Source: Hyphochytrium catenoides
Lineage: Eukaryota; Protista; Hyphochytriomycota
Length of the DNA stretch: 64,000 nt
Assembly: GCA_900088475.1 (NCBI GenBank)
Contig: FLMG01004054.1
Span: 1-64,000, forward strand
Reading direction: 5' to 3'
Positions 26,501 through 40,918 of this stretch are shown piece after piece. The notes below the pieces were generated by a model. The model did no database searches. It had not been told where the DNA came from and saw nothing but the letters and a program-made list of their open reading frames with translations. Each line of letters begins with the position of its first letter. Position 1 is the stretch's first letter. Both the position numbers and the translations under genes were made by a program.

Positions 26501-28378
26501 AAAGAACAAGGAGAAGGGATAAAATCCCTAGCAGAGGAGCGGAAATCGTTGAGGCTCCGACAGAAGCATCAGGCAACAGCTGACGCCGTATCGAATATGA
26601 CCGAGAGGCTAAGGGATCTAGGCATCCTTCCGTAAGTGATATATGTCTTCCTCACGAAATGCGACGGGGCAGCAACTTAACAGAGCAATGGAGGGTAGAA
26701 GAGGGTAATGGGCCCGAGACCTGATGCCTGTCTAAACAGTAGTATCCTCGCGTGTGCAAAAATGGACTAATATTGACAATGGTAACACGGTCACTTCAGG
26801 TCAGAGCCGTCCTCATTAGATCAAGAGGAGTCTGGTGCTGGCTCACTGAAGCAGGAGGGCGAACGTCAAGATGACTTGAGTCGTGGTGGTGACGGTGCAA
26901 GCAGTCCTCATATCTTTGAGAGGGAGGTCGAAAAAGTCGCAGACAGAGAACACGGGGGAGACGAAGAGGCTCCTCCGGTCTTCCAGAGCGAATCCCCAAC
27001 CTCCATTAGTGCTCGCTCTATCAGACTCAAGAATAGTGCCCCTGAGGTGAAGACTGAAAAAGATAAACATGCGCTTAGCGGCCAGGGTTTGTCGAGGAGT
27101 GTGGAGAGCCTCAGGCGGTCCAGCACGGAGGGGCAGGGGGTATCGCGATCTCTCTCCGCCTTCATCTCGGGTCACTCTTCGCTTCAGCCAGCGAGGGAGC
27201 TCAACGTGTCTTATTCTACAATCCCGAAAGGTTACAGAAGGTCCTCCCAAACTGTTCACCCCTCGACCTCTCCCGCTAGCTCGTTAGATGGAGAAGTGAA
27301 CGTTTCGTACTCGGCATTCATCTCTGGTTATGGCACGGGTACTACTTCTGCAGAAGAGGAAACTGTAGAAAAGAAAAGCAGCGCAGGTGGAGCTGAACAA
27401 CTTACGGCTGTAGACGTTTCATACTCTACTTTTATTCCTGGATACACCTCCATAGCGAGGACATCCACTGGGCTGATGGAGGGAGATGTGAAATTGAAGA
27501 ATGAAAGTAAGGGAGAGGATAACGATCTGGAGGTAATGGACATATCTTCACCGGAAGGGACCCTTATAGCTTCGAAGGCCAGCTCAGAGCTTCTCAGCAA
27601 GGTGGAAAGGGGGCTAAGGAGAAGGAGCAGTACTGGCTCTTTGCGAGATGGGGACCAGTCTCGCGATGCGGGATTTGATACTCTAGCTCTCTCACGATCT
27701 ATGGATATAGCTGCGATTCAGGGGACGGATGTGAACGCATCCTTCAGTAACTTTATCACGGGGTATAAGATAAGGAACCTCTCTCAAGTCGAGGCTGGTT
27801 TCTCCGACTCCTTCGTGAAAGCTCATAAAGCCAATGAGGGAGTTACTAATGAGGCCAAACGTGAGGAAGCAGAACTCGAGAAGGGTAGTGAGGGAGTAGC
27901 CCCTCTAGCTCCAGGGCTGCTGGAGATATTACGAAAGGGTTCTACACCCCGGCCTGATACTGAAAAGCAGGAAAAAGATAAGCCAGGCAGTGTTGGTGCA
28001 GGGGATGTGGCCGTTGTAACCTCGCCGGGTACGGATTTGGCACAGATAGAGAAGGCTCTTGAGACCGTAGAGATCGCTGGAAAAACGGCTGTATCTCAAC
28101 TTCAAGCCTTCTCTGCACTGCGTGGGACGAACGAGACCGAGGAACAAAGGGCGACACTAACAACAATGGCCATGCGACTTCGTTCTGTTTACGAGGATAT
28201 CGGGAGAACTTTAGAAGAACTCGAGACCCAAGTAGGTAAAGTGGAAGCGACAGACCGGGAACCGATTATAGGGGAAGAAAGTAATATTCCTTCGGAGCGG
28301 ATGGAAGCGCTAGTGGACAAATATTCTGATAGGCTCGTGGAAGCAGTCATCGCCAAACTAAAACATATACAGGAATAG
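20533..28378 (+). CDS. MAPKBP1: MAPKBP1/WDR62-family WD40 repeat protein, multi-exon
   Basis: N-terminal LTLERVLGIT...VAYPAGCVVVIY and GERGHQP; FVTCSTDNTIRFWNL; HDTEILSLDYS; TGSRDRLVHIFD; GHSELITGVKF; ISVGGDGCIFVWRL. C-terminal ALVDKYSDRLVEAV helix typical of the family. Start could be 20512, 20533 or 20583. Confidence 0.92.
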
Positions 28379-28410: not shown

Positions 28411-28433
28411 ANNNNNNNNNNNNNNNNNNNNNN
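28411..28433. other. Assembly gap (23 N)
   Basis: Run of n between two convergent 3' ends. Confidence 0.99.
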
Positions 28434-28565: not shown

Positions 28566-29312
28566 CTAGTCTTCAGCTGCAAGTCCGTCATATGGCGAAA
28601 GGCCGTCCTTGTTCTCTATAGTGTCATCCGCACCCTTCTCAATGAGGAACTCGCCAATTGTTCCTTCTCGGTCGTATGCCATAGCGTAGTGCAGAGGGGT
28701 GTTACCTAACAGAAATCAAAAGGGAGAGACCCATCGGAGGAGAGAAATAAGGAAGATTAGTCTCACGCCATCGTACGATGCGGTATCGGACGCCTAAACA
28801 AGGTAAGTCTTTAGCTCTCTTTTGTGCTAGTTCTCCCTCCCTCTAAAGCATTATCCTGCTGTGGTACATTCTGCACTATTATGTACCTCTCTGATTCCTA
28901 TGGTTGACGTTTGCGCCTCGTGCCAACAGCATCTCTGCCATCTTGAGGTTCGTCTGCTGGCAGGCAACGACAAGAAGTGTATTCCCGTTCTCGTCCTCCG
29001 CATTGACGTTGAACCCTTGGTTAAGACTCTCCTCGACCAGCTTCAGACGTCTATTTCGGCATTGGGAGAAGACGGTCTCAATAGTGGGGACCTTGGCTTT
29101 CTCCCTTAATTCTGCGCTTTGTTGCTCTTGCTCTAACTCCGCTTTCTGGGCCTTCTCTTTGACTGAGAGTGGCCGCATTTTATCCAGAGCGACGAGGATC
29201 TTGCGAACATGAAGCTTGTGCTCGACACCTTGAACAATATCAAAGGAGAAAATGAGAAGAAAAAGCGTTTTTGCTCACTGTAAAGGAAGACTGAAGCGAT
29301 AGGTGGGCCGCT

Positions 29313-29347
<35 letters not shown>

Positions 29348-32300
29348 AGGAAAGAAAGAAAGAAAGAAAAGAGATAGCGAGAGAGAAAAAGAGAGGCAAA
29401 AAGAGAGAAAGAGACACCGGATAGAGACGCACTAAGGGGAAAAAAGGAAAGGCACATAGATAACGTAGCTTGGGAGAATGGGAAGACTAAAATAGAAAGT
29501 GCAGTTTGGGTACCGAGGACGTCTCTCATGTCTTCCGCCCTTAGCTCAAGCAAGAACTCTCCATCCACGGAAGCCTCGGTGAATGCTTGCTTATATTGCG
29601 ACAGAGAGAGTGTGTCCAGCCATCGACCCACATCCTCGACCGTCCAGTCCTTCACTTGCGCAGGGAAGTCTTGTTCTAGGGCTTTTCTTGCCTCTTCAGC
29701 TTCTTTCTTTTTCTTCTCCAACTCCTTTTCCCTCTTCTTTTGGCTCATCTCTTTTGCCTCCATTAGCGCCTCTACATTCTTGTTCTTTGCTCGAGGAATG
29801 TTGGCGGCTGCAGCGGCTGCAGCTGCGGCTGCAGCGGTCTCTGCAGAGGACGAGACTGCCGAGTTGGTTGTGTCGGAGTTGATTTGCCTTAAGTTCTTGA
29901 GCATATTCATGGAGCTCATGTAGGACAAAGACATTGACTGCAGGGAAGTAGTAGTTAGTTTGGAAAAGAACATTACATGGTATTGTTAGACGGGCAATGA
30001 GTATCGCAGGAAAGTGAAGAGGGAAATCGAAGACAGAGAGAGGTAGTACGAGAGATTCGGGGACAGAAGCATTTCAGAAGAGGTTCCAGTCAGTTTAGCT
30101 TCACAAGGAAATCGTAAGAGAGCTGTTTCTTCAGGTCACGATATGAAGCAGCAGGAAGAGGGCATGTGGAATAGCGGAGAGAGAGGCTGTCCACGGGTAC
30201 TAGTCAATAACCATGGAGACAAGAGTAAAAAGGAATCTCTTGGGCGAGTCATTGGAACTTTGGAAGAGGTTTAGGAGTCGAGAGGTAATAAAATATAAAG
30301 GATCCCAGGATCTAGTAGATACCTACCATGAACTGAAACTTCATTAGCTCCTCCGTGCTCTGGAAGATTGCCTGACTCTTTTTCTCGTTCTCTTGCGCCC
30401 GAACTGCGGTAGCAGCAGCAGCGGCAGCGGAGGTTGCAGTAGCTGTTTCCAACTCAATGCCTAAGCAAATGGGTTAGATAGGTTTGAGCTATGTAGATCA
30501 AGACGAGCAACTAAGGCGAACCCTTCGCGCAGGAACAGTGCTTTTCTTCCTAAGCAACTTGCGGACCTTACGCTCACGAGGTCCTAGATTATGCTCCGAC
30601 TCCTTCTCGCCTACCTTTTTCTCTTAGGCTATCCAGCTCTCTCTTCTGCTCCTCGAGTAGTTCCATTAAGTTCTTCTGCAGTCGCCCAAACTCTCGCTCC
30701 TTCCTTATTCTTGTGGCTTCCATATCTGCTATTCTCTCTTCTAATGCTTGGAGTGCATTCTTTTTACTCTCAACCTCTCCATAGACCGACGTAAACTGGG
30801 CCTCCAGCTCCCTCTTCTTCCGCTCTCTTTCTGCCCTTTTCAACTGTATGGCCAGCTCTAAGGCATAACTTTCTTGCTCCGCTCTTCCACCTCTCTGACC
30901 AGGTGTCTGCGGCTTCTGAGGGCTCTTGTTGCCGTCACTGGATGTACAACACACCTGAGCTTGTAAACTACGTGCAAGCAACGAGGAAGTACCGCGGAAG
31001 AAGGAAGGAAAGAGAGGGAAATGACAAGACAACGGAAACGAATGGAAAGAAAGAATCAGGGTTGCTGGATGGAGATGAAAACGTTATCTTATTGGTCAAG
31101 GTTCTCACGCACCTGTTCTGACTCAGGCTCCTGCCTCCTCCTTGCGCCATCTTTTGCTCCTGTTCCTGTGTCATGGCCTGAAGGTCCCGCTCGATCTGAT
31201 CAATCTCCCGTAGCTCCTGCTCAAGAACGGAAAGCTCCTTCTCCGAATCCTACCAAGACAAAGGTGAGCTCACCGTCTTATCGGAAAGAGAGTGAATAAT
31301 GGAGCTGTAGCAGGGCAGAGGCTGCATGAAAATCGCAGAAAGGTCAGCATGTGCAAAAGGTCGTCCCGAACGCGCATATGCAAGTTAGAAAAGCATCCTC
31401 GGCTTGAGGATAATGAAGTGAATGGGTTATGAGTACTGCCCAGAGGAGGTAGATTAACAGCAACATGGAACCACCACTTTCGGTAGTGCGCTCCGTAGGG
31501 CCGGCGTAAGCCAAAGCTGGCGCATACCTTAAGGCTGAGGTGAATCTGGCTGACTCTATCCTCTGCCTGTTCCTGAGAGCGGTGAAGAGCGTCTATCTCT
31601 TCCTGCTGCCTCTGAAAGGCGAGCTTAGACTCTTCTATCATACGTAGACCCAATGACAATCGTTCGGGTCCTGAAGGGCAAGGAAGTCAGAAAAGTCGTA
31701 GACTATACGTAGCCGCAAGTGTAAATTGCTTTTGGAAGCAACAGGCCAGGGTCAGAGACAAAAGTGAGGGGTGTACCGGGAGGGGTGTGCTGCCACTCTC
31801 TTTGCCTGGTGGCTCGCTTTCTTCCCAAGTGCCCTCGATATATTCTCTGCACTTCAGTAGCAGCCATCTCAAGAATCCGTCTAGAGGAGGCGTCAAAGCG
31901 TGTAAAGGTTCAGTGCAAATAGACAGCCTTGAAAGTAAAACAACCAAATAGGCTGCACATCACCAACGAAGTATAGAGATAAGATAGAGAGCTGCACAAA
32001 GCTCACCTTTCTCTGTATCTGTCCCTTTCTCTCTTCATCCGGTAGGTCGCCTGTATTTTGGTAGCGCTTTCGTCTTGAACAATAGCCAACTTTTGCCTAT
32101 TCCACTCTCTCTTGGCATCTTTCCTGCCCAGATGTCCACGGAATATTCTTTGTATGACTCTCGAGGCCTTATCTTTCCTCTTTAACCTTGCCCTCTCTCT
32201 GCCTCTATGCCCCCTGTATACTTTTTCAATGTTGACAGCAGCATCATTCTCTCTTTGCTCTTTCCTCTGCTTCTCCCTGAGTCTCTTGGCCCTCTTTCTT

Positions 32301-35300
32301 CCAAGATATCCTCTTCCAATTCTGCAGAGCGTATGAGCTGCCTCCTGCTCTTGCTCTTCCCTCTCCTTTTGTCTTCTTAGCTCCAGACATCGCTTTCTCC
32401 CCATATATCCTCGGTATGCTGCCTGAATGCGTGTGCAGCAGTAGGACTGATGCCTCTCTTTCTCTTGTGCTGCAAGCAGGGCCATATGTCGCTTTCTTTC
32501 TTGATTCGCCTGCATCATCTGGGCGAAGAGACATCTCTGAGCGTGAGCATCTGAACTTTGCGTCTAACAGCTTCAAGCTTGAGACCGTCTAGAAGCTCTT
32601 CCAGTCTCTCATATGTCCCTACCACTACCTCACCATCCGTATGTCTGCGCGTGGGAGATGGTGTACTCCGTCCTATACCAAATCCCCATTCCTTTATAGT
32701 TCTAGTGTTAGCCGGTTCTTCTCCTTACCTCTTGTTTGACCTTCTCGTATTCTTCTATCTTTAGGATGCCCAGGCGGCTCATCTCTGCCTCTTCTTTCTC
32801 CATCTGATCAAAGATGTTGGAAAGCTCAAGCCTAGACACGACGAACGATTTTTCAAAATCGACAGTTGCGAACGGCAGAGTGGCATCTGGAATGCCGAGT
32901 CTCCAAGAACTATCGATAACCTTGCAACTCACCTCTTAGGAAATAGTGTTGGTGGTTCCAGAGGTTGTGGCCTCTCCATGATAGGCGTAGAAGAGTACAG
33001 AGCTTGGGTGGGAGCAACAACTTTCGTTTCTCCTCCTTGTGGTCTTGAAGCTGAGAGAAAGGTGGCGGCCATTGGCAAAGCCAGAGTAGGAGGGGACGAA
33101 GGACGAGGTTCAGGGGAGAAGGAGTTACTGCTCATTTCCTTCTTCTTGACCTCCTCCCCGCGAAGGAAATCGTCTGCGTCTCGAGGCTGGGCCCCCATCG
33201 ACACAAGAGTCTTAATGTTTGTGCCATGAATGTCCTGATCAACTCTGGAAGGCAGCAGCAAGAGAAGTCAGTCAAAATATCGTTTGACGAGTTGCAAAAA
33301 AACGGTATAAGTAAGGAGAGAAGGCTAAAGCTTAGAATTCAAGGCGATGATGTAACATTGGAGGCAACGTGCAAGAAGGAAAGATTAACGCCGCAAGAAC
33401 CATAAAGCAACGTGGCGGCATTTGCGTCGAAGAGAGTGCTGCGCAAAAGACGGAAGTTAGTAGACAAGAGCGGGGCACTGAGAAACACGATAGGAAAAAG
33501 TGACTTCACTGCTCAAGCTAGTAATGCATCGCTCAAGTACCTTTGCACAGTTCTCTCTATGACTTCAAAGACCTCTCGTCTTGTCTGCTTCCTGTTTGAC
33601 ATCTCCAGTTCGAGAGCACGGATCTTTGCAGCATCCTCCTCCGCCCACTGTTTCCGTCTACGTTCTTGCTCCTCTTTTAGTCTTCTGATGTACTGATCTT
33701 CCTCTTCAATGAGTAAGTCCTTCCCTTTCACCTCTTGCTCTCTCTCAATCTCAGCTTGAAGCTGCTCGCGCTCTTTTATAATAGATTCTATAAAGTTCTT
33801 CCTGTTCTCGATTTCTTCGTCTGCATGAATTGATCGCGCAGGCGATGGAGCTGCTAAAGGAATAGACGGCAAAGGCGGGACTGCATGTGAGTCTCTCAAC
33901 CCGCTATCATTGACCTCCACTTTTGATCCTGCATCCGCCTCCTGTTTTGCAGAGTCCTGCAGCGAACTTTCTTGTCCAGATGATAAGACGTCTGAAAGAG
34001 CAGAAGGAAGACCCGGAGACGTGACGGGTGATGGAGGGGATAGAGATTCCGATGGAATCTCGCTATCCTCCTTGGGCAGCTCCTCTGTACGGCCCAAGCG
34101 GTCAAGTTTACTATTCAAGGAAGAGGAGGACGATGCCTCTAGAACAGCCCCGAGAAAGTCAAGCACCTCCTTCTTTCTCTCCTGTCTAATCTCATGTCCT
34201 CCTTTCATCCATAGAACAAATGTTCCGTGAGGCCTTTTCAGCACCTCAGTGACCTTCTCCTTTGCTTTGACCGTCAAGCGCCCAGCTTCATCTAAGCCAC
34301 CTTGGTTCTTTCCGGCACCCCCTGCGGCTTCTTTTTCTTGTTCCCCATAAGACCATTCGTGGAGTGCTGCCCTCCCTTCAACGAAAGGGTCGACGTTAGA
34401 AGCACTTATGAGCAGGTTGTCTGTGGCTTGTAGTGCGAGGATGGGACACGAGATCTTTGGCAGTTGCTTCCGCATATCTACGCCATGTAGTGCGGACTTG
34501 CAAACACGAATTCGACCCTGCAGCAGATTTGAGGTGGAACCATAATCAGTAAGCGACGAGAGAGAAGAATAAGGGCTTTAGATAGAGCGCAGAAGGCGAT
34601 AGAATTGACTAGCCATGGGAGAGGGATTCTCCGAGAACATAGACAGCTGTTCCATGGCAAAAGGAGAGGTTTCTTAAACTAACTAAGCGCAGGGCTCAGT
34701 ACGTCGTCTACAATCTTCGACAGGCGAGAAGAAATCTGACAAAATTGTCAGAACATAGGGAGGCCAAGTGAGGAGACATTGCGAAAGACTAGGAAAATTG
34801 AGGCCTTGTTAACAGAGAGGCACAACAAAGAGCAGTTGGGATACCGAGAACTTCTGCGGGCCCTTACCTCCAGCGTGATCGGGTTGGTTATGGCCGTGTA
34901 AATGTTTAGAGCAAGGTTCTTGTCCACCCTCTGGAGGTAGTCATCCGAGAAGATAAACTTTGAGAAAAAAGAGATCGGCAAATCTGGGCGTTTGTTAGAG
35001 AGGCAGCCGAAGACATTGATGGAGCTGTGCAAGATAGCAGCGAGCTGAGCGTCCACCCGGGCAAAGCCGTTGAGAAGGATGAGAGACTTCATGGAACTTC
35101 TCAAGCAAATACGCAGATTATGCAAGGACTGCAGGTTGGGCTTAACATCATTGGTTGTAGGGTCCGAGGACTTCAGACCGTCCGCGCACACATTCTGTGC
35201 AGCGAAGCACGAGGCAATGTTGGCACCATTACCGATACCAACTAGATGGAAAGGTAGCTGCAGAATAGGCATTTCTCCCTTTGTATGAATATGGCTAATA

Positions 35301-38300
35301 AGTTCGAGAAGGCGGTCTGCCTGCCATTGGTTGTTCATTTTTTCTCCTGAGAGAGACGCATCAAACTTCGTGTCCGCCTGTGCTGGGTAGTTGTATGCCA
35401 GGATCTGGGAAGAATAACAGAAAAAGATCAAAGGGATCCGCTACTTCCCAGACTGTATACAAGGGAGTAACGATCAGGGCTAAGCGCTACGGATAATTAG
35501 CTTCTCGCCTCTCTTTCTCTTTCTCTTATTTTTCCCTTCCCTAGCTCGTCTGTCGGCACTGAAGCCAAAGATGAGAAAGACAACACGATGATGGGTTTGT
35601 GATGCTTGCCTAATATTCCCTTACCTGACAGCCGGCAAACGCAGTAGAAAGTGGCTTCAAAAACACCAATGTGCTCTCTAGGGTGTCGAAGAAGTCATGA
35701 ACCACAACCAAGCTGCAAGCCTGCCCTGAGAAGTCCGGGGATCCCAGTATGATATAAGGTAGCTCAGTAGCACCGTCTGCACAGGTAAAGAGCTTCGGCA
35801 CCCAGACGGAGGAACCAGTCTCACCTCCAGGCACAGCTGCTAACTTCTCCATGAAGTTCTGAAAGGTGCAGAAAAGAGAGACCGTGAACTCTTTGAAGGT
35901 AGGATATAGCACGTACACGCTTTCTGTCCCATCGCTGACCCTCGTACTCATAACGCTGTCGTCTTGTTTGCCTACCCCGTGGTTTACCATAAAATAGGTA
36001 CTGCTCGCTATATCTCTCTGTCTCTCTCTCGCACATATGTACATCTATGGGATTCCACCAGTATGTACCTTCTGTGCGTTTCTCTTCGCGGCGTCCACAG
36101 CCTTTTTCTGCTTCACCTCTTCATTGTTTGGTGCGACAGGACGGCCAGTCTCCCCTTCTGGCTTAATCGTCATTCTAGATATCGGAGGGAAGAGGTTATC
36201 TGGGGGCCCCGATGGTCCTTTCTCAAGTTCTTCTCTGGAATCCTGCAAAAAAGCTGCAAGGTGTTTGAGGCGCTCGTGGCCTTTGCCATGGCTCCAAGCG
36301 TAAGCCTCAAGCACGTTCGTGATCCTAGTACCATAAGTAACTCAGTCTGTCTGTGTCGCGCATGGGGGGGAAGAAAGAAGGTTTGGAGAGCTAGAGACGC
36401 AAGGGAAGCAGTCAAAAGGTAGACGGACGGTAATGAGAGAGCAAATGATACTGGCTCTCAGGCGCTAGAAAATGCCAATACACGAACGATTCAGTCGACC
36501 CGGTGGAGGAGACTAAGGCATACTGCAAGTGCAGAGAAGGTTGAGAAGACGTTGCACGAGACAAAAGCAAGAGACAAACAATAGCAGTAGATAGGAAGAG
36601 GCCCGCAATCTTTCGTAGCTCCGTCAAAGAGCGACCAGACTGCTCCCGGCACAAATGTGCTGGTTCACCCTCGATGAGTTGATATCGTACCAGGCACAAA
36701 GCTTCGCTGCGCAGTGACTGATGGGCTCGATGGCAGCAGGATTGAAGCGTGGGTTCCTTACGTAAGGCTCTATCAGCCGCAGCTTCTTTTCTGTGAGTCC
36801 TTGCACCTCGAAGGAAGAGAGAAGAGCCAGAAACTTCTCTCCGTTAGCCAGCTTCTTCCTTGCTTCTGGCCACCCGACGACATCTTCTCTCTCCCCTAGC
36901 ATAAGGAGGAGGACCGTGGCTACCATGGACACCGCCGGCGGGGGATTCTTAAAACTTCGGAGCTCTGCTATCTCTCCCTTATTCAACTTAGCAAGACTCA
37001 ATGCAGCTCTGTCAAGTGCTGCCTGCGTTTCTTGCTCAGAGGATTTGCTAGAGGAAAGGGAAAAAGAGTTCAGAAGAGATATTGAGAAAGGACCATGAGC
37101 TAAGAAAGATGGGATCCCCTTGTTTGGGAAACAGCTTCCAAAGTACAGTCACTTCAGAACAACCCTGTACAAGGGCGAGAAAGCATTGCGCGCCGAGAAG
37201 GATCAGGTTATGATAAGGAGTAGTAGAATTAGGACGAACAAGCGTAAGGAAGGTTAAGACGAGTCAGACCGGACAGGCAGACAAACTAGACTAAAAAGAG
37301 GGTAACAGCCCGCCTTCAGAGGACCGACGTGCAGCATGCACCTCAAACCTAGAGATCAGGATCCCCATTCTTACTTACCCGACTCCAAACCTCTCGCTAT
37401 CTTTGTCCTTCTTCCCCTTCTTACTGGCCTGGATTTTAGCTCGGGCCTGCTCCCTGGCCTCTTCTATCATGTCATACACTGCGAAACAATTGCGGCAGAT
37501 GGCTACCTGCTGGTAGTAAACGCCCGGAAACTCCTCGGCCAGAGTAGCTAAAGTTGGCACAGTCCGCCGAAAAGGGTGCATTTAGAGGAAACCATGTGCA
37601 GTCATCCAGCGGATGATGTCAAAGGCTCCGATAAGACGTAAGGAAACTGAAGTCTACTTCGAGTTATGCTAGAGCTAAACGGGTAGCCATAATCGCAACG
37701 AAGGTGTTCAGAGTAGAGAGGGCTGCGAGAGAAGCGGAAAGAGAAGGGACTTACAGTCTTCTGCATCTTCGGAAAGGTAGTCACCTTTTTCCTTTCTCTC
37801 ATAACGTCGCAACAGAAGATCAACTAAGTTTTTCTCCTGTCTCGCCTGAACGATGTCTTTGAAGGGTATCTTAAACGTCTCAGAGCCAGACAAGGCCCGT
37901 TCGTCCCTGATGTCTGCTCCCACGGCACCCCTTACGTGCCGCTCCTGAACAGGAGCCAAATAGTATATGAGATTAGAGAGGAAGGCAGCCAGACGGTGCA
38001 TAGGAGGGGGTGTACGTCCTCTCAACATGTGGCAAAAAAAGAGGAGCACAGACTGTTGCGACTCCGGTATGCATTGTGGGGGACAAAAGATAGATGCATA
38101 CAGAAGGAGGCGCGCATACCATATTCGAGTCACCCATGATTCGCTTAAGCCTGGCCTCTGAGATCTTAGTCTTTATTCCCAAGTGAAGGTCTTTCTGCGC
38201 ACCGTCAGCATCCAGCTGGGGATAATGGGTGGAGTGGTGGGGCAGGAAAAGTTAGTCCACACAAGAGGAGCTTCATAAGAAGAGTCGACCCAACAGATTG

Positions 38301-40471
38301 GCTGAAGAAGGAGCAACTTGTGCGGGGTGTAGCTTCCTCTTCCTTGATCCTCATTTATCATCTTTGTAGGGTAACTGAGACGGTCTAGTCGCTCTCCTTA
38401 CCTTCAGATCATAATGACAAAAATCCCCTGCACAGCCGTTGATTTGAGTGGAACCAAGTAACTCCGCAGCTTGAAGCCGCTTCTGGCGCTGGACGTCAAT
38501 GTAGCGAGAACTCTGGTCGCCTCTATGGCGGGACGGAGACGAGAGAGACTTGGCTGGAGCAGTAGGAGAGAGGCTTTCTCCTCCTTCAGAAGGCTTCCGA
38601 GAAGCACTTAGCCTGCTATTCTCCTGCATAATTTTCGCCACAAGTCCTTCGTCTGGAACAAGAGTGGAGTTTTTCTCTCCTCTCCTCCTTATCCTCTCTT
38701 CAATGTTGGAGGGAATATGGTCTGAGCTTAGAGGGAACCCTTCCGCCATGTGCGTGAAAGGGGTACCCTTACTTCTGGGGTCGCTGGTGGGAGAAGCAGC
38801 ATAAGCCATCCTCTCCCGTTTCTCCACCTCAGAGGACTGGAAGATGCTGATCCTCCCCGGGGCCTCCTTCCCAGGTGATTGTTGCTTCATTGGTGGGGAA
38901 GAAGACTGAGAGCTATTAGAGAGAGTTGCAACTTCAAAGGTCCTTGTGCGGCACAGATGCACTATTCCCTCTCCGTCCAGTAGAAACTCTGCGTCAACAT
39001 ACGTCACTCTGACTTTGTGACAGTTCTCGACCGCACTTCGAGGCAGCGGAGACATGATTTGCAAGAGAGGGATGGAAAAAGAGGATTGATTATAAGGTGA
39101 ACGAGATGATGTGCTTGGCGTCAACTGGATGATGAAGGCAATCCGGACGCTAAGGGGTGGGGTCCATATGGGCAGTAGAAAGAAGAGAGAATGACGATTC
39201 TATAGGGAGTACCCAGGGATGGACGGTAGGGTTGAGACAAGAATAGAACGGAAGGAGCTTAACTGCATACCTGACGACCGACTTCACAATCTCAGTCATC
39301 CTACTGTTAACCCTCGCGGCCATGTTGGGCACCCTCTCAAGCTCTCCCTGCTGTACCGCCGTTACCTTGTGACCCTTGGTGCGGGGTTTGCCATCCCCGT
39401 CCATTCTGGCAACAGGAAAGAAGAGAGATTGTGGGGTGAGGTCAAGCAGAGAAAGAGCCGTAAAACTAGGTTTCCGTGTGAGACCCAAGCTGCATAGGTT
39501 GATCCGTTTTACGATTGTCAAACCACAATTTTATCTTTTCTGCCTCTGGCTTTATCTCCCCCACAAGACTGCACCTCTCCCAACTGTGTGATCCCTTGCA
39601 ACCTCTTTACCTGTACTCTAGCTCGTAGTTCGCATAACCTCCTAGAGGCGGGACCCCTCCTTTCGGGTCTGCATAAGCCTGAAAGCAAGTCACCTCTATA
39701 GGGATGCGAGACAAGAATTCGCCCACTTCGTTAAGGTTGACGATCTGCGGTGAGAGATGAGGAGGTGAGGCAACGGTGGAGATTTGTGGCATGTTGGAGA
39801 CAAACATGAAGTCTAGGAGCTGTCACATGGAGTCATGGCTAATGGAAGGAAGCAGGTGGCAGCAAGGAGAGAGTGACGAGCGGCAAAGGGATGATTGCAA
39901 CAGAGGAGTATGTTGGCGAACATGATGAAGAGCCAGCACCTTGACTGCTCCAGTATCGTAATAAGCTACGAGAATGCTCTTCTTCTTGTTATTCGGAAAG
40001 CCCATGGCGATGTGTTCTAAGGCTTCCTTTACAGCTTGAGGCGTCAAGTGCTTCTCGCTCCTTCGCTGCACCACGCCCTTGGCGCTTGTAAAGAGCCAAC
40101 TCTGCATCTGGCCCTCACTGACATGGATTGTATCGAGGATCTTTGCCTCACATGGCTGCCATATTTAGAGAAGCAGTCATAGATGGGGCAGTGAGGTGCC
40201 GATTGAAGGTGCGGGTGAAAGGAAGGAGGTGACGTAATGGAGGTAGGATAGGAGCTAAAAGAAAAAAAAAACATCCGCAAGATGGCAGGTAAGGAAAAGG
40301 GGGGCGGGCGGAGAAGGTGAACGTGGACATCCTGCGACTCACCATATCGTTACCCCTGGAGGCCATGGCCTGGCAGACCCAGGCCCAGTCCTTGCACACT
40401 GGGACCTGATTTGGTTCTAAGAAGCTGTTAGGCTTCAGGTCCCGAGTGATTTGCTGCACTTGAGACATCAT
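28566..40471 (-). CDS. Giant multidomain protein (~2,200 aa, ~24 exons): ATP-grasp-like region, Cys4 site, dynein MTBD, NDRG-like alpha/beta hydrolase fold, six IQ motifs, coiled coil, SAM, ankyrin repeats
   Basis: Exons chain in phase through GT-AG introns from ATG 40471 (in-frame TAA upstream) to TAG 28566. Motifs: CAGDFC and CRNC; LNKGEIAELRSFKNPPPAV...CAAKLCAWI; VVHDFF and HLVGIGNGA; IQxxYRGxxGRK; WTVEDVGRWLDTLSLSQY...VDGEFLLEL; GNTLLVVAC and GNTPLHYA. Confidence 0.85.
29315..29342. repeat. (GA)n microsatellite in an intron
   Basis: Direct reading. Confidence 0.9.
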
Positions 40472-40918
40472 GTGTTCAAAAGCGTGACCGTCTCTTCTGT
40501 TTTACAGCTGCGCTCTCTTCAGGATCCCTTTCTGATCTTCAACATTCTTCAGGATAGAGCCAAGCATCTGCCCCTCCCTGTCAGGCCACAGCCTCTGAAG
40601 CTCGACTACAGCTCGGCATCTTTGGGCAGAAGCCTGGCAGACAATGAGCTTCACGCGTGTCTTCCCGTCAGCGATACCCCGAAGCCAAGAAGTCCCGCTT
40701 TCGGAAAGGAAAGGCGTAGTGTAGAGTTTGGACGAAGCTAGTTAAGTAGTGCTTCGGCAGCCATCATTGAGAGAGAACGACAGAGCCACAAATGGGCAGT
40801 GGCAGCCTAGTAGAGCAGGCACGATACTATGATAGCAAAGGGTGAAGACTAAGAGAGACAGATAACTGAGCGACACGGAGAGTACGAGAAAGGGAAGAAA
40901 GAGACACGCATGATACAT

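What the first reader, a model, noticed from the sequence alone, without database searches (positions are those of the whole stretch)
28566..40471. Giant motor-less dynein-MTBD scaffold: ATP-grasp-like + Cys4 + dynein MTBD + pseudo-hydrolase + IQ + SAM + ankyrin
Seen: ~24 exons splice in phase into one ~2,200-aa ORF carrying all these modules. Known: the dynein MTBD normally sits on the stalk of an AAA+ motor, IQ motifs bind calmodulin-type proteins, and SAM/ankyrin domains mediate oligomerisation and partner binding. Inference: this may be a Ca2+/calmodulin-regulated microtubule-anchored scaffold, probably flagellar. I know of no functional characterisation of this architecture, though uncharacterised homologs may exist in stramenopile databases.
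Basis: partly seen in the sequence, partly recalled or inferred. Interest (0 to 1): 0.85.

Follow-up and report, generated by a model that had tools for sequence, protein, structure and literature searches.

The report
Motor-less dynein-tip scaffold protein gene
This is one real 24-exon gene for a 2,198-residue protein, shared by stramenopiles but never studied, that joins dynein's microtubule-gripping tip (without the motor) to a domain related to a flagellar dynein-docking protein, so it probably anchors a calcium-sensitive scaffold on flagellar microtubules.

Summary
Observation confirmed. On the minus strand, ATG 40471 to TAG 28566, 24 GT-AG exons splice in phase into a 2,198-aa protein. 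Full-length proteins of oomycetes, brown algae, chrysophytes, bolidophytes and a thraustochytrid align collinearly along all of it. A ~97% identical soil strain shows 1.5% change and no indels in my exons, against 4.05% and 27 indels in introns.

- ATP-grasp fold at the N-terminus.
- Four invariant cysteines.
- Dynein MTBD (Pfam MT, E 1.7e-17), closest to axonemal dyneins, with short coiled-coil stubs and no AAA ring.
- Alpha/beta-hydrolase fold with the nucleophile Ser replaced by an invariant Gly.
- About six IQ motifs, a SAM domain and ankyrin repeats.

New here: the N-terminal domain is homologous to DC4 (TbDC65/dDC4), the ATP-grasp-like subunit of the trypanosomatid outer-dynein-arm docking complex (profile E 3.6e-11; Foldseek E 3e-10). 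This gives the flagellar reading its first indirect support. Location, calmodulin binding and zinc binding remain inferred.

No paper on the family was found; homologs are annotated "hypothetical" or "SAM domain-containing". The scan had already noted motor-less dynein MTBDs on other DNA of this genome (s1-331060, s1-331079, s1-357055); this is a different gene.

The parts
28566..40471 (-). Whole gene: 24 exons, 2,198 codons plus stop. Exons (high-low): 40471-40343, 40155-39940, 39744-39611, 39405-39271, 39035-38402, 38215-38120, 37944-37755, 37547-37379, 37047-36691, 36324-36069, 35858-35625, 35404-34868, 34517-33541, 33244-33129, 32886-32729, 32518-32007, 31880-31777, 31670-31528, 31249-31113, 30937-30615, 30460-30327, 29937-29514, 29228-28887, 28705-28566.
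   Evidence: model. (homologs cover aa 2-2197). (exon versus intron divergence against strain contig L001).
38909..40402 (-). DC4-like, probably non-catalytic ATP-grasp-fold domain (aa 24-247; exons 1-5).
   Evidence: The window protein matches family profile A3 at E 3e-56. Profile A3 against PDB sequences: TbDC65 (9e5c_7c) E 3.6e-11, ODA dDC4 (9e78_5K) E 1.3e-8. In the AF2 model of homolog P0219, residues 20-235 have pLDDT above 90. Foldseek gives 9e78_5K at E 2.7e-10, and PurK, Ddl and SucC ATP-grasp enzymes at E about 2e-4.
37402..38470 (-). Cys4 module (aa 394-560): GSTQxxGC406xGDFC411, a variable linker, then IPFKxIxQxRxEK...C529xxC532 followed by a helix. Putative single Zn site.
   Evidence: The four Cys, plus Q, G, R, E, R, Y, P, Y and R, are invariant in 28 homologs from oomycetes to ochrophytes. 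The window matches profile A4 at aa 394-560. No known family matches; the best is the FYVE domain of Vps27 at E 2.5, not significant.
36240..37028 (-). Dynein-type microtubule-binding domain with short CC1 and CC2 stubs (aa ~575-715; exon 9 and the start of exon 10).
   Evidence: Pfam PF12777 MT, E 1.7e-17, matching only profile positions 87-214 of 344. PDB best hits: DNAH9 3e-14, DNAH1, DNAH17 and DNAH2, with cytoplasmic dynein-1 at 1e-4 to 1e-6. The family profile shows the same order. The AF2 model shows a helical bundle with flanking helices of 15-30 residues.
34137..35795 (-). Alpha/beta-hydrolase-fold pseudoenzyme (aa 794-1156), with nucleophile elbow G-I-G908-N-G-A and His1136 kept. It carries a lineage-specific insertion of about 30 aa (aa ~921-950).
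   Evidence: The window matches profile A1 at E 2.7e-124. The AF2 model of homolog P0010:714-1058 has pLDDT 88.5 and pTM 0.90. Foldseek matches alpha/beta hydrolases at E 1.8e-17 (4q3l). In the profile alignment the catalytic Ser of 4q3l pairs with the family's invariant Gly. Pfam Abhydrolase_1 and Hydrolase_4 match only below threshold.
31796..32449 (-). IQ region (aa ~1470-1645): four canonical and two degenerate IQ motifs.
   Evidence: Pfam IQ at E 5.6e-13 and 2e-3. Motif positions 1477, 1543, 1568 and 1627, plus degenerate ones at ~1510 and ~1600. The motifs align with IQ repeats of homologs.
29794..31783 (-). The most conserved part: a coiled coil followed by an Ala/Ser/Met-rich block (aa ~1650-1945; '...GIELETATATSAAAA...EELMKFQFMSMSLSY...'). 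Function unknown.
   Evidence: tblastn identity to distant homologs is 60-78% here, against about 40% elsewhere. Alignment. No Pfam family above threshold.
29176..29661 (-). SAM domain (aa ~1990-2056), split by intron 22.
   Evidence: Pfam SAM_1 at E 3.8e-11 and SAM_2 at E 2e-10. The junction was fixed by homolog alignment.
28593..29091 (-). Ankyrin repeats (aa ~2085-2190), at the C-terminus.
   Evidence: Pfam Ank_4, Ank_2 and Ank at E 2e-7 to 1e-6. Identity to Triparma in the last exon is 72%.

Best explanation
One gene encodes a non-motor, non-enzymatic microtubule-associated scaffold inherited from the stramenopile ancestor.

Shown:
- The 24-exon gene and its module order.
- Homology of its head to the ATP-grasp-like docking-complex subunit DC4.
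- A dynein MTBD of axonemal type without AAA ring or long stalk.
- An alpha/beta-hydrolase fold lacking its nucleophile.
- IQ, SAM and ankyrin modules.

Inferred mechanism: the protein sits on flagellar doublet microtubules near the outer-dynein-arm docking site. The DC4-like head holds a coiled-coil partner such as DC1/DC2. The MTBD, freed from ATPase-driven registry changes, acts as a passive tubulin anchor. The IQ array carries calmodulin- or centrin-type light chains that make the assembly Ca2+-responsive. The conserved C-terminal coiled coil, SAM and ankyrin parts multimerise it or recruit partners.
For: - Gene and architecture.
- Conserved across Oomycota, Ochrophyta and Labyrinthulomycetes, in a tree that follows the organismal groups.
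- DC4 homology: profile E 3.6e-11 to TbDC65 and 1.3e-8 to ODA dDC4. Foldseek E 2.7e-10 to the modelled axonemal chain, about a million-fold better than to any ATP-grasp enzyme.
- What DC4 does: it binds the DC1/DC2 coiled coil, contacts the ODA alpha heavy chain, and its loss slows swimming (PMC7617938 and PMC11971395).
- MTBD: Pfam MT, ranked axonemal above cytoplasmic dyneins for both the single sequence and the family profile.
- No AAA or dynein-motor Pfam family in any exon piece or in six full-length homologs.
- Dead hydrolase.
- IQ, SAM and ANK.
Against: - There is no localisation, proteomic or expression evidence for any family member, and no RNA run for this organism.
- Stand-alone proteins with the same ATP-grasp fold, some also aligning across the Cys4 region, turn up as AlphaFold DB cluster matches whose accessions look ciliate, oomycete, apusomonad and cryptophyte; organism names were masked. 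This protein is therefore a paralog sharing the domain, not shown to be the DC4 ortholog.
- The Cys4 profile does not hit trypanosomatid DC4.
- No downy-mildew protein was listed, not even from zoospore-forming Plasmopara, so the flagellate versus non-flagellate profile does not discriminate.
- Short coiled-coil stubs leave the MTBD's affinity state unknown.
Confidence: 0.55

Rival explanations
1. Same gene and architecture, but the protein works on non-axonemal microtubules, such as flagellar roots, cortical arrays, the spindle or organelle positioning. The DC4-like domain would then be a generic protein-binding pseudo-ATP-grasp.
For: The ATP-grasp(+Cys4) unit occurs in many uncharacterised proteins of varied architecture. 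The same genome has another, unrelated ~3,900-aa scaffold with a motor-less MTBD (earlier notes s1-331079 and s1-331060). That suggests the MTBD is a general microtubule-anchoring module in stramenopiles. Tandem-MTBD proteins also exist.
Against: The best sequence and fold matches of the head are axonemal docking-complex chains. The MTBD ranks with axonemal rather than cytoplasmic dyneins. All named organisms with the family make flagellated cells, and no diatom, eustigmatophyte or Blastocystis protein appeared among named hits. That last point is only suggestive.
Confidence: 0.3
2. The protein is an active enzyme: the ATP-grasp domain would ligate something, as TTLL enzymes do on tubulin, or the hydrolase domain would be catalytic, with the MTBD targeting the activity to microtubules.
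For: The ATP-grasp fold is confidently predicted. The hydrolase keeps an invariant His and several invariant Asp residues.
Against: The ATP-grasp domain has no invariant column in 28 sequences. Only W, G, A, V and one D are nearly invariant, so no conserved Lys/Glu/Asn set is present. DC4 is described as a structural subunit. The hydrolase nucleophile position is an invariant Gly, aligned to the catalytic Ser of 4q3l.
Confidence: 0.07
3. The locus is really two or more adjacent genes whose exons happen to splice in phase, so the architecture is an artefact of the model.
For: No RNA evidence exists for this organism. Several database homologs are shorter models, such as P0010 at 1,388 aa and P. 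infestans PITG_03739 at 1,743 aa.
Against: Dozens of independent full-length proteins cover residues 2-2197 collinearly, among them transcriptome-derived ones (MMETSP 'type:complete'; EukProt; Spumella). There is no in-frame stop across 23 junctions. The short homologs lie on short contigs.
Confidence: 0.03

Closest known systems
DC4 (pDC4/dDC4; T. brucei TbDC65, L. tarentolae LtaP31.0090), a subunit of the trypanosomatid outer-dynein-arm docking complex
   Same: Homologous ATP-grasp-like domain. The family profile hits TbDC65 residues 58-281 at E 3.6e-11 and dDC4 at E 1.3e-8. Foldseek gives E 2.7e-10 with TM 0.61 by target.
   Different: DC4 is 490-570 aa and has no MTBD, hydrolase, IQ, SAM or ankyrin part. 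The Cys4 profile does not detect DC4. Orthology is not shown, because stand-alone look-alikes of the same fold also exist, some with oomycete-style accessions.
Dynein heavy chains, especially axonemal ones (DNAH9/DNAH17 outer arm, DNAH1/DNAH2 inner arm)
   Same: The MTBD sequence and fold, including the conserved 'AELRSF.(N/K)PPxAV' H1 region and the C-terminal 'CAAKxCxW' helix.
   Different: No tail, linker or AAA1-6 ring. Only Pfam MT positions 87-214 of 344 are matched, so the long antiparallel stalk that transmits ATPase state is missing. There is no flap insertion of the DNAH1 type (alignment).
Pseudo alpha/beta-hydrolases such as the NDRG family (from general knowledge)
   Same: Alpha/beta-hydrolase fold with the nucleophile Ser replaced by Gly in a G-x-G-x-G-A elbow.
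   Different: No Pfam Ndr match. The nearest structures are bacterial esterases at 12-17% identity. The His is retained.
Ca2+-sensing accessories of the outer-arm docking complex: Chlamydomonas DC3 and metazoan calaxin (from general knowledge)
   Same: Possible functional analogy. A Ca2+-responsive element sits at the docking site; here it would be light chains bound to the IQ motifs.
   Different: No sequence relation. The analogy is inference only.
The other motor-less MTBD scaffold of this genome (earlier scan notes s1-331079 and s1-331060) and the tandem-MTBD proteins (P0001, P0003, P0006)
   Same: A dynein MTBD used outside a motor.
   Different: Different genes and architectures. Those lack the module set seen here: DC4-like head, Cys4, hydrolase, IQ, SAM and ANK.

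Membership tests
Dynein heavy chain | Six-module AAA+ ring, linker and tail (Pfam DHC_N1/N2, AAA_5-9, Dynein_C and related) | tested here: not met
   Pfam scans of 20 exon pieces and six full-length homologs show none of these families. The protein is 2,198 aa with the MTBD at aa ~575-715.
Dynein heavy chain | Microtubule-binding domain at the tip of the stalk (Pfam MT PF12777) | tested here: met
   E 1.7e-17 and 63.9 bits against a cutoff of 24. DNAH9 at E 3e-14.
Dynein heavy chain | Long antiparallel CC1/CC2 stalk linking the MTBD to AAA4/AAA5 | tested here: not met
   Only MT profile positions 87-214 of 344 align. The AF2 model of the homolog has flanking helices of about 15 and 20-30 residues.
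ODA docking-complex subunit DC4 | ATP-grasp-like domain homologous to TbDC65/dDC4 | tested here: met
   Profile E 3.6e-11 and 1.3e-8. Foldseek E 2.7e-10. The window protein matches the same profile at E 3e-56.
ODA docking-complex subunit DC4 | Orthology: the one-to-one counterpart, of similar size and architecture | tested here: inconclusive
   The architecture differs (2,198 aa against ~500). Stand-alone proteins with the same fold exist, some with oomycete- and ciliate-style accessions. A search for them in the large protein database returned nothing.
ODA docking-complex subunit DC4 | Binds the DC1/DC2 coiled coil on protofilaments A07-A08 and contacts the outer arm | not testable with these tools
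   This needs localisation work or cryo-EM of stramenopile axonemes. The property is taken from PMC7617938.
ATP-grasp enzymes | ATP-grasp fold | tested here: met
   Foldseek matches PurK, Ddl, SucC-beta, RIMKLA and synapsin at E 2e-4 to 1e-3 over residues ~25-226.
ATP-grasp enzymes | Conserved ATP- and Mg2+-binding residues | tested here: inconclusive
   There is no invariant column in 28 sequences. Only W, G, A, V and one D are at least 90% conserved. No residue-by-residue superposition on an enzyme was possible.
Serine alpha/beta-hydrolases | Alpha/beta-hydrolase fold | tested here: met
   AF2 pLDDT 88.5. Foldseek E 1.8e-17, TM by target 0.82.
Serine alpha/beta-hydrolases | Nucleophile Ser in the G-x-S-x-G elbow | tested here: not met
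   G-x-G-N-G-A with an invariant Gly at the Ser position, aligned to 'GISYG' of 4q3l. In the window this is GIGNGA at aa 906-911.
IQ calmodulin-binding motif proteins | IQ consensus repeats | tested here: met
   Pfam IQ at E 5.6e-13 with three scored stretches, plus a further exon at E 2e-3. Motifs are listed. Actual binding of calmodulin was not testable.
SAM and ankyrin-repeat proteins | SAM_1/SAM_2 domain and ANK repeats | tested here: met
   SAM_1 at E 3.8e-11; Ank_4 at 2.3e-7 and Ank_2 at 3.5e-7.
Known zinc-finger families (for example FYVE) | Significant profile match with the full Cys/His ligand pattern | tested here: not met
   The best match is the Vps27 FYVE domain at E 2.5, covering only two short motifs. 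No Pfam family matches. The four Cys are nonetheless invariant.

The most novel reading that the evidence does not exclude
[quoted passage not shown] Its DC4-like head would sit on the docking complex. Its dynein-derived, motor-less MTBD would form a static tether to tubulin, possibly to the neighbouring doublet. Calmodulin on the IQ array would take the Ca2+-sensor role that DC3 or calaxin plays in other lineages. More broadly, the dynein MTBD would be a mobile microtubule-anchoring module with a large unrecognised repertoire of non-motor carriers, including tandem arrays.
Probability: 0.2. Interest if true: 0.8.

Novelty: new variant of a known kind. Interest (0 to 1): 0.66.

Why it matters
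The dynein microtubule-binding domain is normally treated as unique to dynein heavy chains, with its affinity set by the motor through the stalk. Here it sits in a conserved non-motor protein, next to a domain homologous to a docking-complex subunit that was only named in 2025.

If the protein is axonemal, it would show how stramenopile flagella anchor and regulate outer arms. These flagella include the zoospores of Phytophthora, Aphanomyces and Saprolegnia, and brown-algal gametes. It would also offer a natural motor-free MTBD for studying tubulin binding.

The representative search suggests many more motor-less MTBD proteins exist. Of the best 150 hits, only two have dynein length, and dozens carry 2-6 tandem MTBDs.

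Tried and rejected
- RNA evidence. Neither sequencing-run search listed an RNA run that holds the locus. Laying four runs gave only unspliced DNA contigs of a related soil strain. I reused those contigs for the exon/intron divergence test.
- First gene model. The unguided model skipped or truncated real exons, and the homology-weighted model over-extended exons into introns. Both were replaced by manual curation (one search failed on mistyped motifs).
- NDRG membership of the hydrolase. There is no Ndr Pfam hit, and single-exon phmmer against the PDB was blank. I kept it only as a generic pseudo alpha/beta-hydrolase.
- FYVE or other zinc-finger identity for the Cys4 module. Not significant.
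- ESM Atlas look-alikes of a full-length homolog. Only generic ankyrin/SAM clusters, with scores of 0.70 or less.
- Search for stand-alone DC4-like proteins with profile A5. No hit, and probably uninformative because of the word prefilter.
- Literature. Searches for the domain combination, for 'MTBD-like' or PF12777, and for twelve homolog identifiers found no description of the family.
- Flagellate versus non-flagellate profile in Peronosporales. No downy mildew was listed at all, including zoosporic Plasmopara, so no conclusion follows.
- A 49-nt GT..AG stretch inside the hydrolase insertion. Rejected as an intron, because it is out of frame and too short.
Full report
**Observation**

The stretch lies on the minus strand. 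Stop-to-stop frames already showed IQ, SAM, ankyrin and dynein-MTBD-like peptides in order. Pfam on the open pieces confirmed them:
- MT PF12777, E 1.7e-17
- IQ, E 5.6e-13 and 2e-3
- SAM_1, E 3.8e-11
- Ank_4, Ank_2 and Ank, E about 1e-7

A splice-aware dynamic programme found an uninterrupted in-phase path of 24 exons from the ATG at 40471 to the TAG ending at 28566. I corrected its boundaries against homolog alignments. The curated model has 24 exons, all with GT-AG introns of 106-389 nt, a 6,597-nt CDS and 2,198 aa.

**One gene, not several**

A search of 1.84 billion representative proteins with the MTBD exon returned proteins of 1,400-2,400 aa with a single MTBD near residue 300-650. By tblastn they are collinear with the window from 40155 to 28578. 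By blastp they cover model residues 2-2197, for example Aphanomyces euteiches at 2,044 aa and Saprolegnia diclina SDRG_03101 at 2,052 aa.

The same Pfam set (MT, IQ, SAM, ANK) is precomputed for well over a hundred homologs, some of them transcriptome-derived (MMETSP 'type:complete', EukProt, Spumella elongata). Named organisms include:
- Bolidophytes: Triparma
- Chrysophytes: Spumella, Chlorochromonas, Mallomonas, Epipyxis
- Brown algae: Ectocarpus, Discosporangium
- A thraustochytrid: Hondaea
- Many oomycetes

An independent test came from a Logan contig of a soil metagenome (L001). It is a ~97% identical strain covering window 40699-31577.

| Region | Aligned bases | Mismatches | Rate | Indels |
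|---|---|---|---|---|
| My exons | 5,048 | 77 | 1.5% | 0 |
| Introns | 3,827 | 155 | 4.05% | 27 |

Of the 77 exon mismatches, 52 fall at third codon positions. Changed codons split 46 synonymous to 27 non-synonymous. No RNA run of the organism was listed, so direct transcript proof is lacking.

**Modules**

1. N-terminal domain, aa 24-247.
   - An AlphaFold2 model of the Aphanomyces homolog (alignment A2) predicts residues ~20-235 at pLDDT above 90.
   - Foldseek finds ATP-grasp enzymes (PurK, Ddl, SucC-beta, RIMKLA, synapsin) at E about 2e-4 to 1e-3.
   - The three best PDB hits, at E 3e-10 to 7e-10, are chains of trypanosomatid flagellar doublet structures (9e78_5K, 9e5c_7c, 9y6s_5K).
   - A sequence profile of the domain (A3, 28 sequences) hits those chains, named TbDC65 (E 3.6e-11) and 'distal DC4 | ODA dDC4' (E 1.3e-8). 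Nothing else is significant.
   - The window's own protein matches the A3 profile at E 3e-56.
[quoted passage not shown] It contacts the ODA alpha heavy chain and is needed for normal swimming, with orthologs reported in other flagellates including Chlamydomonas.
   - The domain has no invariant column in 28 sequences, which argues against catalysis.

2. Cys4 module, aa 394-560. The four cysteines (C406, C411, C529, C532) and nine other residues are invariant across 28 homologs. No known family matches. Zinc binding is inferred.

3. MTBD, aa ~575-715.
   - Only the distal part of the Pfam stalk model aligns (positions 87-214 of 344).
   - The exon continues after 'CAAKLCAW' into 'ITNVLEAYAWSHGKGHERLKHL', as in homologs and dyneins.
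   - Axonemal dyneins outrank cytoplasmic dynein-1, both for the exon (3e-14 against 1e-4 to 1e-6) and for the family profile (1e-29 to 1e-24 against about 1e-17 to 1e-19).
   - No AAA or dynein-motor family occurs anywhere in the protein.

4. Hydrolase, aa 794-1156.
   - The AF2 model has pLDDT 88.5.
   - Foldseek matches alpha/beta hydrolases at E 1.8e-17.
   - The elbow is G-x-G-N-G-A, with an invariant Gly where 4q3l has its Ser. It is therefore a pseudo-hydrolase that keeps the His.

5. The remainder, in order:
   - a coiled coil
   - about six IQ motifs
   - a very conserved coiled coil plus Ala-rich block of unknown function (60-78% identity to distant homologs)
   - a SAM domain
   - ankyrin repeats

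**Explanation**

The shown facts fit a passive scaffold. Its head is related to an axonemal docking subunit. Its tubulin anchor is taken from an axonemal dynein. It carries light-chain-binding IQ motifs and multimerising or partner-binding C-terminal modules. I put about 0.55 on an axonemal, docking-region role.

The main rival, at about 0.3, is a role on other microtubule arrays. It is supported by three things:
- stand-alone proteins with the same ATP-grasp fold, many also aligning across the Cys4 region, which appear as AlphaFold DB cluster matches with ciliate-, oomycete-, apusomonad- and cryptophyte-style accessions (organism names were masked)
- another motor-less MTBD scaffold in this genome
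- tandem-MTBD proteins

The Peronosporales profile test did not discriminate, because no downy mildew appeared at all.

**Placement**

In a tree of 44 family members the window protein groups (97% SH-aLRT) with unnamed metagenomic proteins. It stands apart from the oomycete, the Hondaea-containing and the ochrophyte clades. This is consistent with vertical descent in a poorly sampled stramenopile lineage.

**Novelty**

I found no paper describing the family or any motor-less dynein MTBD. The scan itself had noted motor-less MTBDs on other DNA of this genome (s1-331060, s1-331079, s1-357055).

Noticed in passing
window 28412-28433: A run of 22 N (a scaffold gap) lies 133 nt downstream of the gene's stop codon. 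The 3' UTR and the spacing to the convergent + strand ORF at 26876-28378 are therefore uncertain.
   Followed up: no
P0001/P0161 (L002:6001-8241), P0003, P0006 and many others: Proteins of 400-1,300 aa made of 2-6 tandem dynein MTBDs with no motor (Pfam MT, 4-5 stretches, E down to 6e-64). One is a single intron-less ORF on a 678-kb eukaryotic metagenome contig, beside Surp/CID and SLC12 genes. This looks like a separate, undescribed class of motor-less MTBD proteins.
   Followed up: partly
L001 (Logan contig SRR28521185_50972) = window 40699-31577: A soil 'size fractionation' metagenome holds a ~97% identical strain of this organism, so it or a close relative lives in soil. Three metatranscriptome runs of the same study held almost none of the sampled words for this locus.
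   Followed up: partly
P0268 (Ectocarpus siliculosus CBN77180.1 'Response receiver'), P0269-P0273, P0276: A paralogous stramenopile family keeps the IQ + SAM + ankyrin C-terminus, in some members with Abhydrolase_1 as well. It carries a Response_reg (CheY-like) domain and no MTBD, which suggests head-swapping on a common scaffold.
   Followed up: no
window 29794-31783 (aa ~1650-1945): The best-conserved part of the protein is not any named domain. It is a coiled coil followed by an Ala/Ser/Met-rich block ('IELETATATSAAAA...EELMKFQFMSMSLSY...AAAAAAAANIP'), 60-78% identical to bolidophyte and chrysophyte homologs. Its function is unexplained.
   Followed up: partly
AlphaFold DB cluster hits of model mae557e295515: Several uncharacterised proteins with Tetrahymena-, Stentor-, apusomonad- and oomycete-style accessions align from the ATP-grasp domain through to the Cys4 module (query residues up to ~507). 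The two may therefore form one conserved unit that is widespread in protists. One hit is annotated as calmodulin-fused.
   Followed up: no
window 40505-40741, minus strand: An open frame ends with a stop at ~40504, only about 30 nt upstream of this gene's ATG. It may be the last exon of an upstream gene on the same strand or part of the 5' leader.
   Followed up: no
window ~35100-35190 (aa ~921-950): This organism's hydrolase domain carries an insertion of about 30 residues that is absent from all aligned homologs. It is in frame and is not an intron.
   Followed up: partly
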